64,000 nt of DNA from Selaginella moellendorffii (Eukaryota > Plantae > Lycopodiophyta): NCBI RefSeq assembly GCF_000143415.4, contig NW_003314281.1:1220481-1284480 (forward strand), written 5' to 3'. A model generated the notes under the pieces. The model had not been told where the DNA came from, made no database searches, and saw nothing but the letters and a program-made list of their open reading frames with translations. Positions 27,084 through 30,883 of this stretch are shown one piece after another (position 1 is the stretch's first letter; every line of letters begins with the position of its first letter). The position numbers and the translations under genes were made by a program.

Positions 27084-28073
27084 ATGGGTGCTCTCAAAGT
27101 CATTGCATTGCTGTTGTTGGTCGAGCTTGCGCTCTCTGCTCGTCTCCCACCAAAGTCAGATGTTTCTTTCTCTCAGAACTACTATGTCCGATGGGCCAAC
27201 GATCATACGCGAGCCCTCAACGGTGGCACCGAAATGCAGCTTGTTCTCGACAAGGCATCAGGTAACAATCTCTCTTTCTTTCAAAGCTTCTCTTTGCTGA
27301 TCAAGTCCTGTTGCATGATAGGTGCTGGATTTGGGTCCCGCAGCAAATACTTGTTCGGTCATGTCAGCATGAAGATCAAGCTGGTTCCCAAAGACTCTGC
27401 TGGAACGGTGACGGCATTCTACATGTCCTCCGAGACCGACAAGCACGACGAGATCGACTTTGAGTTCTTGGGGAACGTTTCCGGGCAGCCATACATCGTC
27501 CAGACCAACGTTTTCGCCAATGGCGTTGGAAACCGGGAGCAGCGACACTACCTCTGGTTCGACCCCACTCAGGACTTCCACAGCTACTCCTTCCTCTGGA
27601 ACAAGCAGCAGATCATGTAAGTGAGCCCTCCATAGCCACTAGTTTATATCGATCGATCATTGCTGAAGCTGTGGTTTTGGTCCCTCAGATTCTACGTGGA
27701 CGATGTCCCTCTGCGTGTCCACAAGAACAACGAAGCCATTGGGATCCCATTCCCGAAGAGCCAGCCAATGGGGATCTACTCGAGCCTGTGGAACGGAGAC
27801 GACTGGGCTACTCGCGGCGGACTGGAGAAGATCAACTGGGATCACGCTCCATTCGTGGCGGCGTACAAGGGATTCAGCGTGGATGCTTGCGCCGGGGGTG
27901 TGGAGTCGTGCAGCGCTCCCAGGGGCAACTGGTGGGAGCAAAAGGCATTCCAGCGTACCGACAAGGAGACCAAGAGCAAGCTCAAGTGGGTCAAGGACAA
28001 CTACATGATCTACGACTACTGCACCGATAGCAAAAGATTTCCCACCACTCCAGCCGACTGTGGCCAGTTTTGA
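27084..28073 (+). CDS. XTH: Xyloglucan endotransglucosylase/hydrolase (GH16), copy 1, 3 exons
   Basis: Signal peptide, catalytic [27 protein letters not shown]-like CTATAAAT at ~26948. Confidence 0.95.
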
Positions 28074-28284
28074 GAGCTTCCATGTACTTACATTCTTTTG
28101 TACAAAAAAACACACATTTTTTTTTACCAGACTTTACATGCTTCCTCAGTAAGATCATGCCATAGTTGCCGACTGTGGCCAGTTTTGAGAGCTTCCATGT
28201 ACTTACATTCTTTTGTACAAAAAAACACACATTTTTTTTACCAGACTTTACATGCTTCCTCAGTAAGATCATGCCATAGTTGCC
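28053..28284. repeat. Two-unit ~115-bp tandem duplication
   Basis: GCCGACTGTGGCCAG...CCATAGTT is repeated at 28053-28167 and 28168-28281, with GCC microhomology at the junctions. Confidence 0.95.
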
Positions 28285-29611
28285 TGGCTCTCATCGAAAA
28301 TCGGTGCGAGATACCACGCGTAAGGAAGGCCCTTTTCCTCGGAGGAAGTGTTGTAAGAGGCATGCGTGATTTTTCGCCTTCTAAAGTATTCTCCCCATGC
28401 GTACTGTACTATGAACCTGCGGGAAGAAGAAGGTGTTTGTGAAAAGGCACGAGCTTGAATGAGAAAGTTTTTTTAAAGTACCACAAGACGATGGCGATCG
28501 CACAGAGGGAGATGAATAGTATCGCTGTGACTTGGGATTCTCCAGAGTACTTTATCCATCCGATGACGATCATGCTCAGGAGGAAGAGAGAAACACCTGC
28601 GGCAAAAGAAAGAAAAGCTGAGCTCCAGGATTTGGCAACTGTTTTGTACGGCTTACCGAAAGAAAAGGAATGGAAAGCTTGCTGCCAGGTAGTCTCACAT
28701 CTGCGTGGACAGCAAGATCATGAAAGAGTGTACTTACGACAGAAGGAAAACAAGGAAAAAAGAACGAAAAATCTACCTGCAATACCAAAAGGCTTCCAGA
28801 GTTCTCCTGGGCGCAGGAGGATGATCACCTGGATTGTAGTTTCGGCAAAAGTCTAAGCAGTTAAAGATGAATTCCTCCTCGGCTTCTTCGTTGACATAAG
28901 TTCTGCCAATCTTGAGAATGCTTCCTAGAATAAGCGTGCAGGTAACCATTGACATGATCATCAACCCTTCCTGTAAGAAAAGAGTGAGCTGAATTTTAGG
29001 TAGATTAGGAAATCTCACCACAACAGCCGTGAGGACTCCATACACTCCAAACAAGGCCTACTGCGAGAAACAATGAGTCCATGAACCGCGAAGAAAAGTA
29101 ACTTCGAAACAATCAACCTTTGAAAACTTCATTTGTGGTTGGAACTGCGTAAGCGTGACAATAGCGAAGCCTGCAAAGAGCGCTGACAAGTTTGACACTG
29201 CCTTGAGAAGCTCCGATTTCTCTTCCACATCTCGCCGATTCCTCTCCACAAATCTGCCAAAGGAAAGAAGTTTTAGACCAAAAGAACAAGAAAAACAAGT
29301 CGAGAAGCCTGCCTTAGCCAAAGGCAGCGCGCATTCTCCAAATTCCTATACTCCAGATTCTCCTGCCTCCACCTGCGATCGATCCATCACTGCAAGAAAT
29401 CCCTTGCTCTAGACCCTCACCATCGCTTGCTCGCGCGCAATTCGGCGTCGTCCTTCCTCACTCGGCGCTCCACACGCATCCACTCCACATCCTGCGATCG
29501 CGCCTCGTGAATGTGCGCCCGCCAGGCCGCGTCCTCCTCCCGCCACGCCCGGTTCATGCCGCTGTCCAGCGCCGCGAGGATGCCCTGCGCTGCGTCGCCC
29601 GCGCTCGCCAT
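28269..29611 (-). CDS. Orai/CRAC-type four-TM channel homologue, multi-exon
   Basis: Spliced: EEKSELLKAVSNLSALFAGFAIVTLTQFQ (TM1), YGVLTAVV|EGLMIMSMVTCTLIL (TM2), GVSLFLLSMIVIGWIKY (TM3), VTAILFISLCAIAIVLW (TM4). The model needs one GC-AG intron. Confidence 0.82.
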
Positions 29612-29768: not shown

Positions 29769-30883
29769 TCAATCAACTGGGATTGGTACCATAATGCTAT
29801 CATTTCTTGCACTTGCAAAGATCAGTTCTTCCAGCTCCCCTTCCTCCGAATCCACATGATCTAGAAAAACTCACAAAGAATGAATCAAAGATCTTCTAAC
29901 TTAGCGGCTTTTCATCGTGCTAACCTGGATCCTCGTCGAAGAGGATAGCTTTGCTGGTGCCACTGCTCTTGAAAACCTCCATCTTGATCACGCGATTGCC
30001 TCCAAACACCTCCAGATGCACGAGATCGCCAGTCTCGAGCTCCTGATCCTCCACAAACTGCCTCCATTCATGGCGCTTCACCATGAATCTCCTCCCGGAG
30101 CTGTGCACGCTCAGCGATTGGCAGCTCCCGCCATTGATCACGCGGTACTGCATCCCGATGTTGATGTGCGCGCGCACGAATCCTGGGGGCAAGTTCTAGA
30201 GCACACAAGCAATCACAGAGAAGCCAAGGTTGGAGGAGAAAGATCATAGAATCCCAGGGGAAGATCGATACCAGAGTGAAGCTGGGCGACAAATGCGACC
30301 TGGTGATCTTGATGTCGATGCTGGGCTTGTCCGTGTCGCTGCAGATCGTCACGCTCGACGGCCTGCCATTCCCCTTTGCGCGTTTCCTGGCTGGCGGCGA
30401 CGCACTGTTGTCATCTCCCGAGACTTTGGAGCTGGAGTCCAAGCTCGCCGCCGCCCGGTTCTTGGCACCGCCGCCGCCGCTCCTCCGCCTCTTCCTCCTC
30501 GGAGCTTTTTCCTTCTCCGCCTCTTCCTCTTCCTCGTACTCCTCCTCCTCCTCGTCTCCCCCCGGGCGAAAGCTTTGGAGAAGCTCCAGCTGCTCGTGCT
30601 GGCTATGGCGATCATCGTAATCGCCATCACCCTCCTCGTCATCGTCGCCCTCTTTTTCTTCCTCCGGGTCCTCTCCCTCGTCTACCTCTCGATGCTGCGC
30701 TTGGAGATGGCGATAGCTCGCGTCGGGATCGCCACCACCGTCGCCCACACTCTTCACTCGCAAATTCCAGCCATGCTCGCCTCCTCCATCTTTCTTCGTC
30801 AAGCTCTTCCTCCGAATCACAACGCTTGCTTTCACCTCTAGCTCTTCCTCCGCGCCGAGCGCCCGATCGAGACTATTTCCCAT
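29769..30883 (-). CDS. B3-domain-like protein (REM/VRN1-like), paralogue 1
   Basis: Acidic/basic N-terminal half, then IKITRSHLSPSFTL|ELAPGFVRAH...WRQFVEDQELETGDLVHLE, a B3-like pattern. The last exon is inferred. Confidence 0.65.

What the first reader, a model, noticed from the sequence alone, without database searches (positions are those of the whole stretch)
28269..29611. Orai-like channel with Gln at the E106 selectivity-filter position
Seen: TM1 LKAVSNLSALFAGFAIVTLTQFQ aligns without gaps to human Orai1 [23 protein letters not shown]. G98, F99 and V102 are kept, but E106 is Q (CAG, 29147-29145) and R91 is N. The TM3 E190 equivalent is Ser (LFLLSMIVIGWIKY), and a Glu appears in TM2 (VVEGLM). 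Established: E106Q abolishes Ca2+ conduction and is dominant-negative in animal Orai. Orai genes occur in non-flowering plants but not angiosperms, and plants lack STIM. Inference: an intact gene that may encode a regulatory subunit, a channel with different selectivity, or a STIM-independent channel gated via its long charged N-terminal helix.
Basis: partly seen in the sequence, partly recalled or inferred. Interest (0 to 1): 0.75.

Follow-up and report, generated by a model that had tools for sequence, protein, structure and literature searches.

The report
Spikemoss Orai channel with glutamine pore filter
This is a real, expressed Orai-type channel gene of the spikemoss Selaginella moellendorffii in which the glutamate that makes animal Orai channels calcium-selective is a glutamine. 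That glutamine is an ancient, conserved state of most green-plant Orai proteins rather than a defect, so plant Orai channels probably do not work like the animal calcium-entry channel.

Summary
Window 29611-28269 (minus strand) holds an 8-exon, 308-aa gene. It is 99.7% identical to RefSeq 'uncharacterized protein LOC9644061' of Selaginella moellendorffii.

- **Expression:** all seven introns, including the GC-AG intron, are spliced out in transcript contigs from four studies. Codon 29147-29145 reads CAG in all of them.
- **Family:** the protein matches Pfam Orai-1 at E=2.6e-41. Its AlphaFold model's top nine PDB matches are all Drosophila Orai.
- **Pore residues:** Gln120 aligns to E106, Asn105 to R91 and Ser229 to E190. 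G98, F99 and V102 are kept.
- **Selection:** 9 of 10 variants seen in transcripts are synonymous.

New here: the Gln is not private to this gene.
- Streptophyte Orai proteins fall into three old subfamilies. Two are Gln-type (this gene is in one). The third is a divergent Glu-type with Trp at the R91 position.
- All three are present from the alga Spirogloea to Ginkgo.
- Two chlorophyte clades are also Gln-type. An AU test rejects a single Gln clade (p=0.004).
- Every named trebouxiophyte homologue found is Gln-type.

Most likely this is a STIM-independent Orai-fold channel without CRAC-type calcium selectivity. Function is untested. The scan had already noted the Glu/Trp paralogue elsewhere in this genome.

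The parts
29421..29611 (-). Exon 1 (codons 1-64): start ATG at 29611 and most of the charged, Trp-studded N-terminal helix
   Evidence: Translation. Transcript contigs reach 29669. Aligns from residue 1 to RefSeq P0179.
29313..29372 (-). Exon 2 (codons 64-84), followed by the GC-AG intron 29312-29254
   Evidence: Joint 29253|29313 with ends CT..GC on the + strand, seen in 4 of 4 runs.
29118..29253 (-). Exon 3 (codons 84-129): conserved pre-TM1 helix (RFVERNRRDVEEKSE) and pore helix TM1
   Evidence: Pfam Orai-1 E=2.8e-11, profile positions 2-40. Aligns to dOrai TM1.
29145..29147 (-). CAG codon = Gln120, at the position of the E106 (dOrai E178) selectivity-filter glutamate
   Evidence: No variant in four transcript assemblies. 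Alignments.
29058..29063 (-). Tandem CAG|TAG acceptor of intron 3. The distal site (exon starts at 29057) gives the open frame. The proximal site (exon starts at 29060) puts TAG in frame after Lys129.
Evidence: Major joint 29057|29118 in 4 runs. Minor joint 29060|29118 in run X2 only.
29019..29057 (-). Exon 4 (codons 130-142): first half of TM2
28777..28970 (-). Exon 5 (codons 143-207): Glu143 (28970-28968), rest of TM2, and the conserved cytosolic TM2-TM3 loop (Cys180, Pro193, Pro196)
   Evidence: Pfam Orai-1 E=6.6e-07, profile positions 66-106. Conservation.
28657..28700 (-). Exon 6 (codons 207-222): RCE..W motif at the start of the TM3 helix
28482..28596 (-). Exon 7 (codons 222-260): TM3 with Ser229 (28576-28574) at the E190 position, short outer loop, first part of TM4
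   Evidence: Pfam Orai-1 profile positions 118-154. Alignments.
28269..28416 (-). Exon 8 (codons 260-308 plus stop TGA 28271-28269): end of TM4 and a low-confidence C-terminal tail with the conserved GLPY.W motif
28053..28284 (.). Two copies of a 115-bp tandem repeat covering the last 16 nt of the CDS and the 3' UTR
   Evidence: TRF finds 2.0 copies at 99% match. Contigs of 3 runs hold one copy only.

Best explanation
**Shown**
- The gene is Selaginella moellendorffii LOC9644061.
- It is a functional, transcribed member of the Orai family with a four-helix Orai fold.
- It belongs to one of two ancient Gln-type subfamilies of streptophyte Orai, called Q_I here.
- Its pore helix keeps the hydrophobic gate and hinge: Leu109, Gly112, Phe113 and Val116.
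- The outer ring of six glutamates that gives animal CRAC channels their high-affinity Ca2+ selectivity is a ring of glutamines (Gln120).
- In this protein the outer loop carries no acidic residue, and has Lys126 and Lys129.
- The Gln is fixed in all streptophyte Gln-clade sequences aligned here, taxa from zygnematophyte algae to Ginkgo, and the gene is under purifying selection.

**Inferred**
- It assembles into an Orai-type hexameric pore that cannot select Ca2+ the CRAC way.
- Most likely it passes cations with low or no Ca2+ selectivity. A Gln-lined filter is also found in plant CNGC channels.
- It is gated without STIM. Candidates for the gate are the family's most conserved cytosolic parts: the roughly 100-residue N-terminal helix continuous with TM1, and the TM2-TM3 loop.
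- It may also mix with the Q_II and Glu/Trp-type paralogues.
For: **Identity and integrity**
- Pfam Orai-1 at 141.6 bits, against a cutoff of 25, over the whole profile.
- AF2 model with mean pLDDT 90.4. Helix 2-120 is continuous with TM1.
- The nine best Foldseek PDB matches are all Drosophila Orai, with target TM-score 0.59-0.75.
- 99.7% identical to the RefSeq protein.
- Spliced transcripts in 4 studies, with CAG confirmed.
- 9 synonymous to 1 nonsynonymous variant.

**Gln is ancient and selected**
- 76 of 120 representative clusters that match TM1 have Gln.
- In the tree, a 22-row all-Gln streptophyte clade (support 93) splits into two subfamilies. Each holds zygnematophyte algae and land plants.
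- TM1 is almost invariant within them.
- Independent Gln clades exist in chlorophytes. The AU test rejects one all-Gln clade, p=0.004.

**Gln-type works without a Glu partner somewhere**
- All 8 named trebouxiophyte species have only Gln-type hits. These include natural double-Orai proteins in which both halves are Gln.

**Not CRAC-like**
- E106A/Q kills Orai1 and E106D lowers its selectivity (PMC4835918).
- E190Q lowers selectivity (PMC2151669).
- Outer-loop net charge is +2 here, against about -2 in Glu-type relatives.
- STIM is absent from plants according to reviews.
- Plant CNGC filters use GQN/GQS triplets (PMC7830781).
Against: - No electrophysiology, localisation or oligomer data exist for any plant Orai.
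- In the animal scaffold the same substitution gives a dead, not a re-tuned, channel.
- A Glu-type paralogue (P0229) is co-retained with the Gln types in Spirogloea, Sphagnum, Selaginella, Diphasiastrum and Ginkgo. That fits obligate mixing as well.
- The structure is a monomer model, so pore geometry is inferred by homology.
- The tree is unrooted. Glu-to-Gln polarity rests only on Glu being the state in animals, diatoms, Chlamydomonas, Mesostigma and Cymbomonas.
- 'Gln-only' genomes rest on word-based searches and on existing annotations.
Confidence: 0.6

Rival explanations
1. Obligate heteromer or regulatory subunit. Gln-type subunits do not conduct on their own. They co-assemble with the Glu-type paralogue (P0229 family), setting the number of glutamates in the ring and so tuning or damping Ca2+ entry. 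This would be a natural version of the dominant-negative E106Q.
For: - E106A/Q loses function in Orai1.
- A Glu-type paralogue exists in the same genome.
- All three subfamilies are co-retained from Spirogloea to Ginkgo.
Against: - Named trebouxiophytes (8 species) and six Closterium strains show only Gln-type hits.
- Natural tandem double-Orai proteins have Gln in both halves.
- The Glu-type partner has a strongly diverged TM1 (Trp at R91, Ser at G98, Thr at V102), so co-assembly is not obvious.
- Two Gln subfamilies kept for hundreds of millions of years is a lot for a mere damper.
Confidence: 0.2
2. Still a Ca2+-selective channel. Other residues take over Ca2+ binding, so physiology is CRAC-like despite Gln120. 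Candidates are Thr117 and Thr119 next to the Gln, the TM2 Glu143, or loop residues.
For: - The rest of the pore helix is conserved.
- Glu143 is conserved in 13 of 16 Q_I sequences.
- Chlorophyte Gln-types keep an Asp two residues after the Gln and an acidic loop.
Against: - In this protein there is no acidic residue between Val116 and TM2, and the loop is net +2.
- Glu143 maps to hOrai1 V131 in TM2. That helix lies behind TM1 and about three turns below the filter (alignment plus Orai structures; inference).
- Subfamily Q_II lacks this Glu altogether.
Confidence: 0.1
3. Repurposed pore. With a neutral outer ring, a positive outer loop and one conserved Lys ring inside, the channel carries anions or something other than metal cations, or the protein has a non-channel role as proposed for the Orai-derived Jiraiya/TMEM221.
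For: - Net positive outer mouth in this protein.
- Lys101 is conserved as K/R in all homologues.
- Jiraiya is an Orai-derived family lacking the Ca2+-binding residues (bioRxiv 10.1101/716472).
Against: - Lys126 and Lys129 are not conserved even within Q_I.
- The inner pore is less basic than in animals (Asn and Ser at R91 and R83).
- No precedent for anion conduction by an Orai was found in the papers read.
Confidence: 0.08
4. Artefact or decaying gene. The Gln is an assembly error, or the gene is a pseudogene.
For: - The proximal acceptor puts a TAG in frame.
- A minor isoform uses it in one run.
Against: - CAG in four independent transcript assemblies, with all introns correctly spliced.
- 9:1 synonymous to nonsynonymous variants.
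- Full-length alignment to orthologues at 55-61% identity.
- Gln in every aligned streptophyte Gln-clade sequence.
Confidence: 0.02

Closest known systems
Animal Orai1 / Drosophila Orai (CRAC channel pore subunit; PDB 4HKR, 6BBF, 7KR5)
   Same: - Same Pfam family and same four-helix fold.
- TM1 motif with L95, G98, F99 and V102 equivalents, and K87.
- TM1 extends as a helix into the cytosol.
   Different: - Gln instead of the E106 filter Glu, Asn for R91, Ser for R83 and Ser for E190.
- Met for the H134 gating His.
- No acidic outer loop.
- About 85 extra N-terminal helical residues with conserved Trp/Arg/Glu motifs.
- Long conserved TM2-TM3 loop and very short TM3-TM4 loop.
- No helical C-terminal STIM-binding arm in the model.
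- No STIM in plants.
Engineered Orai1 E106Q/E106A and E106D, E190Q mutants
   Same: Same residue change at the same pore position. E190 is also non-acidic here.
   Different: - In Orai1 the change abolishes function (PMC4835918).
- Here it is the conserved wild-type state of a whole clade under purifying selection.
PpOrai1 of Physcomitrium patens and the other 'plant Orai' listed in calcium-toolkit surveys (Edel et al. 2017, as cited)
   Same: - Same streptophyte Gln-type clade.
- PpOrai1 in the published alignment also reads ...VVTLTQF at this position.
   Different: - PpOrai1 is in the sister subfamily Q_II; this gene is in Q_I.
- The surveys record presence or absence only. None of the papers that could be read comments on the Gln.
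Selaginella paralogue LOC9650622 (P0229) and its land-plant/Spirogloea subfamily
   Same: Same genome, same family, same N-terminal helix and loop motifs.
   Different: Keeps Glu at E106 but has Trp at R91 (the human SCID residue change, from my own knowledge), Ser at G98 and Thr at V102.
Plant CNGC channels with GQN/GQS/GQG pore triplets
   Same: Ca2+-permeable plant channels whose filter uses Gln where animal relatives use Glu (PMC7830781). This is a functional analogy only.
   Different: Unrelated fold: tetrameric P-loop channels.

Membership tests
Orai family (Pfam PF07856, homology) | Profile match above the curated threshold over the whole domain | tested here: met
   141.6 bits against a cutoff of 25, profile positions 2-170 of 173. 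Three exons match collinear parts of the profile.
Orai family (Pfam PF07856, homology) | Four-TM Orai fold with TM1 continuing as a cytosolic helix | tested here: met
   AF2 pLDDT 90.4. Top nine Foldseek PDB hits are dOrai, probability 1.00, target TM-score up to 0.75.
Orai family (Pfam PF07856, homology) | TM1 pore motif: L95, G98, F99, V102 equivalents | tested here: met
   Leu109, Gly112, Phe113, Val116. Conserved in 130-156 of 161 aligned sequences (the 160 homologues plus the window model).
CRAC channel (Ca2+-selective, store-operated Orai) | Glutamate ring at E106 (dOrai E178) as selectivity filter | tested here: not met
   Gln120, codon CAG, confirmed in DNA and 4 transcript assemblies.
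CRAC channel (Ca2+-selective, store-operated Orai) | Acidic TM3 residue E190 and acidic TM1-TM2 loop (D110/112/114) | tested here: not met
   Ser229 at E190. The loop FQPQMKFSK has net charge +2.
CRAC channel (Ca2+-selective, store-operated Orai) | Basic inner pore R91/K87/R83 | tested here: not met
   Asn105, Lys101, Ser97: only the K87 equivalent is basic.
CRAC channel (Ca2+-selective, store-operated Orai) | C-terminal helical arm that binds STIM, and a STIM partner in the genome | tested here: inconclusive
   Residues 274-301 are non-helical with pLDDT 58-71. A conserved GLP[FY].W motif sits there instead. STIM absence in plants is taken from reviews; the genome was not searched here.
CRAC channel (Ca2+-selective, store-operated Orai) | Hexameric assembly and measured Ca2+-selective current | not testable with these tools
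   Only a monomer could be folded. There is no physiology for any plant Orai in the papers found.
Streptophyte Gln-type Orai, subfamily Q_I (defined here) | TM1 ...F.GFA.VTLTQF plus placement in the starred 10-row clade with Ginkgo, Diphasiastrum, moss and zygnematophyte orthologues | tested here: met
   Tree supports of 95*, 98* and 99* around the window row. Nearest rows are Ginkgo Gb_37702 (60-61% identity) and Diphasiastrum 15G.

The most novel reading that the evidence does not exclude
Green-lineage Orai proteins form a distinct functional class. The Glu ring of the filter has been exchanged for Gln at least three times: in streptophytes, in Sphaeropleales-type chlorophyceans and in trebouxiophytes. 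This would yield STIM-independent Orai-fold channels with non-CRAC permeation, meaning weakly selective cation or even anion conduction. In streptophytes a conserved trio of two Gln-type subfamilies and one Glu/Trp-type subfamily would mix to set selectivity. If so, 'plant Orai' would not be evidence for store-operated Ca2+ entry in plants at all.
Probability: 0.3. Interest if true: 0.8.

Novelty: new variant of a known kind. Interest (0 to 1): 0.6.

Why it matters
Reviews list Orai as a calcium channel that plants kept 'as far as gymnosperms'. They ask whether store-operated Ca2+ entry exists in plants that lack STIM (PMC11894410).

- Two of the three old streptophyte Orai subfamilies lack the one residue that makes Orai Ca2+-selective. 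Several chlorophyte clades lack it too.
- The third subfamily carries Trp at the position where Trp blocks human Orai1.
- The animal model therefore should not be transferred to plants.
- This gives a sharp, cheap experiment: wild type against Q120E, each subfamily alone and in combination.
- It also offers natural 'mutants' for understanding Orai permeation and STIM-free gating.

Tried and rejected
**Searches that gave little or nothing**
- The first exon model, using the proximal CAG acceptor, gave an in-frame TAG. Moving to the distal TAG acceptor fixed it, and reads confirmed the move.
- phmmer of the full protein P0179 against PDB sequences found nothing at E<=0.01. The TM1 exon alone gave only E about 1.2. 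A 54-sequence profile was needed.
- tblastn found no second Orai copy in the window.
- Collins & Meyer 2011 (PMC3175768) is not held. Edel et al. 2017 could not be read either, so I cannot exclude that one of them mentions the Gln.
- Searches for functional work on plant or algal Orai found none. One broad search was uninformative.

**Ideas rejected**
- TM2 Glu143 as a replacement filter. It maps to hOrai1 V131, one turn outward of H134, in a helix that does not line the pore. It is absent from subfamily Q_II.
- A single origin of Gln (AU test p=0.004).
- Assembly error or pseudogene.
- Asn at R91 and Ser at E190 as specific oddities. They are general outside animals.

- Exons were searched by reference.
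- Full-length searches used the database protein P0179, which differs at one residue (N179S).
- The joined model was used only inside local scripts.
Full report
**1. What is in the sequence**

On the minus strand, 29611-28269 holds an eight-exon open reading frame of 308 codons.
- The exons are 29611-29421, 29372-29313, 29253-29118, 29057-29019, 28970-28777, 28700-28657, 28596-28482 and 28416-28269.
- Six introns are GT-AG.
- Intron 3 ends in a tandem CAG|TAG acceptor. Only the distal site keeps the frame open; the proximal one puts TAG in frame.

**2. Is it real and expressed**

Twenty public runs from nine studies hold a third to over half of the sampled words of a 1.5-kb stretch around the gene. 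That is the expected share for a spliced transcript.
- Contigs of four runs from four studies were laid on the locus. All seven introns are skipped at exactly the modelled borders, including the GC-AG intron and the distal acceptor.
- The contigs reach from about 29669 to beyond the stop.
- No run shows another letter at 29145-29147, so CAG (Gln120) is not an assembly error.
- Ten single-base differences appear among the contigs. Nine are synonymous and one changes Asn179 to Ser.
- With roughly a quarter of sites synonymous, nine or more synonymous out of ten is expected about 3 times in 100,000 (my arithmetic). The gene is under purifying selection.

**3. Identity**

The exons were searched one by one, by reference.
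- The TM1 exon matches Pfam Orai-1 at E=2.8e-11, exon 5 at 6.6e-07 and exon 7 at 0.004, on collinear parts of the profile.
- A search with the TM1 exon against 1.84 billion representatives gave 120 hits.
- A word search seeded with one of them returned P0179, RefSeq 'uncharacterized protein LOC9644061 [Selaginella moellendorffii]'.
- P0179 has 308 aa and is identical to my model except N179S, the same variant seen in run X10.
- P0179 scores 141.6 bits over the whole Orai-1 profile.
- An AlphaFold model built on 54 homologues has mean pLDDT 90.4. It shows one helix from residue 2 to 120 (N-terminal extension plus TM1), TM2 at 129-167, a short helix at 170-185, TM3 at 200-238 and TM4 at 243-273.
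- The nine best Foldseek matches in the PDB are all Drosophila Orai.

The window is therefore spikemoss DNA and the gene is a true Orai homologue.

**4. The pore residues**

Three independent alignments agree: phmmer to dOrai, a 54-sequence profile to dOrai (E=4e-15), and the published alignment of PMC11085791 with HsOrai1-3.

| This protein | hOrai1 / dOrai position |
|---|---|
| Gln120 | E106 / dOrai E178 |
| Val116 | V102 |
| Phe113, Gly112 | F99, G98 |
| Leu109 | L95 |
| Asn105 | R91 |
| Lys101 | K87 |
| Ser229 | E190 |
| Met146 | H134 |
| Glu143 (TM2) | V131 |

The outer TM1-TM2 loop (FQPQMKFSK) has no acidic residue and two lysines.

**5. The Gln is a clade character**

- Of the 120 representative clusters found with TM1, 76 have Gln and 44 have Glu. 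Over all 314 proteins gathered, the counts are 142 Gln, 149 Glu and one Asp.
- A maximum-likelihood tree of 57 non-redundant full-length proteins shows a streptophyte clade (support 99*). It is made of a long-branched Glu-type group and an all-Gln group of 22 rows (support 93).
- The Gln group splits into two subfamilies.
  - Q_I holds this gene, Diphasiastrum 15G, Ginkgo Gb_37702, Sphagnum, Ceratodon, Spirogloea s96 and Closterium N68. Physcomitrium P0225 shares the moss Q_I TM1 motif but was not a row in the tree.
  - Q_II holds Selaginella P0011, Diphasiastrum 05G, Sphagnum, Chara, Closterium and Spirogloea s20. PpOrai1, seen only in the published alignment, has a Q_II-type TM1.
- The Glu-type group has TM1 LRSLSWLTGLITSFTMTSPVEF. 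It holds Selaginella P0229, Diphasiastrum 07G, Sphagnum and Picea in the tree. By the same TM1 motif it also includes Ginkgo Gb_35851 and Spirogloea s155.
- All three subfamilies therefore predate land plants. They are co-retained in a zygnematophyte alga, a moss genus (Sphagnum), lycophytes and Ginkgo.
- Within the two Gln subfamilies TM1 is almost invariant.

Outside streptophytes:
- Gln-type: Tetradesmus and Monoraphidium, and all named trebouxiophytes (Chlorella, two Micractinium, Myrmecia, Elliptochloris, two Apatococcus, Coccomyxa).
- Glu-type: Chlamydomonas Cre01.g025000, Bryopsis, Ostreobium, Cymbomonas and Mesostigma.
- Volvox africanus has Asp.

The tree needs at least three changes of state. 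An AU test rejects a tree with all Gln rows together (p=0.004). The group was named after seeing the tree, but the trait column was left in the alignment, which biases against rejection. Because Glu is the state in animals, diatoms and the early-branching green lineages, repeated Glu-to-Gln replacement is the simplest reading. The tree is not rooted.

**6. What this says about function**

Established for animals:
- E106A/Q abolishes Orai1 function and E106D lowers Ca2+ selectivity (PMC4835918).
- E190Q and the loop aspartates also lower selectivity and widen the pore (PMC2151669).

This protein lacks all three acidic elements. It keeps the hydrophobic gate and hinge, and it is under selection. 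A CRAC-type high-affinity Ca2+ filter is therefore very unlikely, but a working pore is likely.

A purely regulatory role is weakened by lineages in which only Gln-type proteins were found. These include natural two-domain proteins with Gln in both halves.

The most conserved parts of the whole family are cytosolic.
- The pre-TM1 helix LENAR.LW.RFVEKNRRDVEEKSEQLK holds two of the seven invariant residues (Asn77, Asn89).
- Upstream there are Trp-Arg-x-Glu-Asp repeats.
- The TM2-TM3 loop holds GD.PP.P.R...FW..RCE..W, with invariant Pro193, Pro196 and Trp212, and nearly invariant Cys180 and Cys208.
- There is a C-terminal GLP[FY].W motif.
- These, not a STIM-binding arm, are the candidates for gating. 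This is inference.

Gln-lined filters do occur in Ca2+-permeable plant channels: the CNGC triplets GQN and GQS (PMC7830781). That is an analogy, not evidence.

**7. Comparison with what is known**

Orai in Physcomitrella and Selaginella, its loss in angiosperms, and the lack of STIM are all in the literature. The RefSeq entry is unnamed. None of the papers I could read comments on the Gln, although it is visible for PpOrai1 in a published supplementary alignment. Two key papers could not be read.

I therefore rate this a new variant of a known kind. It belongs to the Orai family by homology and fold. It is not a CRAC channel by the defining pore features.

**8. Surroundings**

- A xyloglucan endotransglycosylase gene ends convergently at 28073 on the plus strand.
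- A B3-domain gene lies upstream at about 29923-30883 on the minus strand.
- There is no second Orai copy in the window.

**9. Earlier scan notes**

Another agent had described the Glu/Trp paralogue elsewhere in this genome (s1-394677). My tree and alignments place that paralogue as the sister subfamily of the Gln types.

**10. Limits**

- No hexamer model, physiology or rooted tree is available.
- Absence claims rest on word-based searches.
- The joined exon model was not sent to any search tool, by rule. P0179 stood in for it.

Noticed in passing
window 29058-29063 (minus strand): NAGNAG acceptor. In run X2 a minor contig (depth 4.6 against 8.6) uses the proximal CAG. This inserts an in-frame TAG after Lys129, giving an N-terminal helix plus TM1 only, or an NMD target. 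Another X2 contig (29033-29146) retains intron 3.
   Followed up: partly
window 28053-28284: A 115-bp tandem duplication (2.0 copies, 99% match) starts inside the last 16 nt of the Orai CDS and fills the 3' UTR. Transcript contigs of three runs carry a single copy. This could be an allele difference or a repeat collapse in assembly.
   Followed up: partly
P0229 (Selaginella LOC9650622) and relatives P0226, P0223, P0254, P0274, P0275: The third streptophyte Orai subfamily keeps Glu at E106. It has Trp at the R91 position, Ser at G98, Thr at V102 and Pro two residues before the Glu. It sits on a very long stem branch (1.18).
   Followed up: partly
P0020 (Myrmecia bisecta, 532 aa), P0280 (Elliptochloris bilobata, 550 aa), P0002, P0185: Natural proteins with two Orai domains in tandem, with Gln at the filter position in both domains of P0020 and P0280, the two checked. 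They look like ready-made concatemers, which fits a hexamer built as a trimer of dimers.
   Followed up: no
P0293 (Volvox africanus): Asp at the filter position, a natural equivalent of the selectivity-lowering E106D. Chlamydomonas has Glu there.
   Followed up: no
window 28959-28970 (TM2), and alignment: Acidic or His residues in TM2 vary by clade. Glu143 (hOrai1 V131 position) is found in 13 of 16 Q_I proteins. Chlorophycean Gln-types and Chlamydomonas-like Glu-types have Glu at the H134 position. Closterium Q_II proteins have His there, as animals do.
   Followed up: partly
window 28697-28859 (codons 180-208), and alignment A1: The cytosolic TM2-TM3 loop is long and highly conserved across non-animal Orai. 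Pro193, Pro196 and Trp212 are invariant, and Cys180 and Cys208 nearly so. In contrast, the outer TM3-TM4 loop is only about 5 residues. Its function is unknown; it may be a redox or ligand site.
   Followed up: no
window 27660-28073 (+) and 29923-30883 (-): Neighbouring genes. A xyloglucan endotransglycosylase (GH16 plus XET_C) has a 3' end converging on the Orai 3' UTR. A B3-domain protein with an acidic, Glu/Asp-rich N-terminal part lies upstream.
   Followed up: partly
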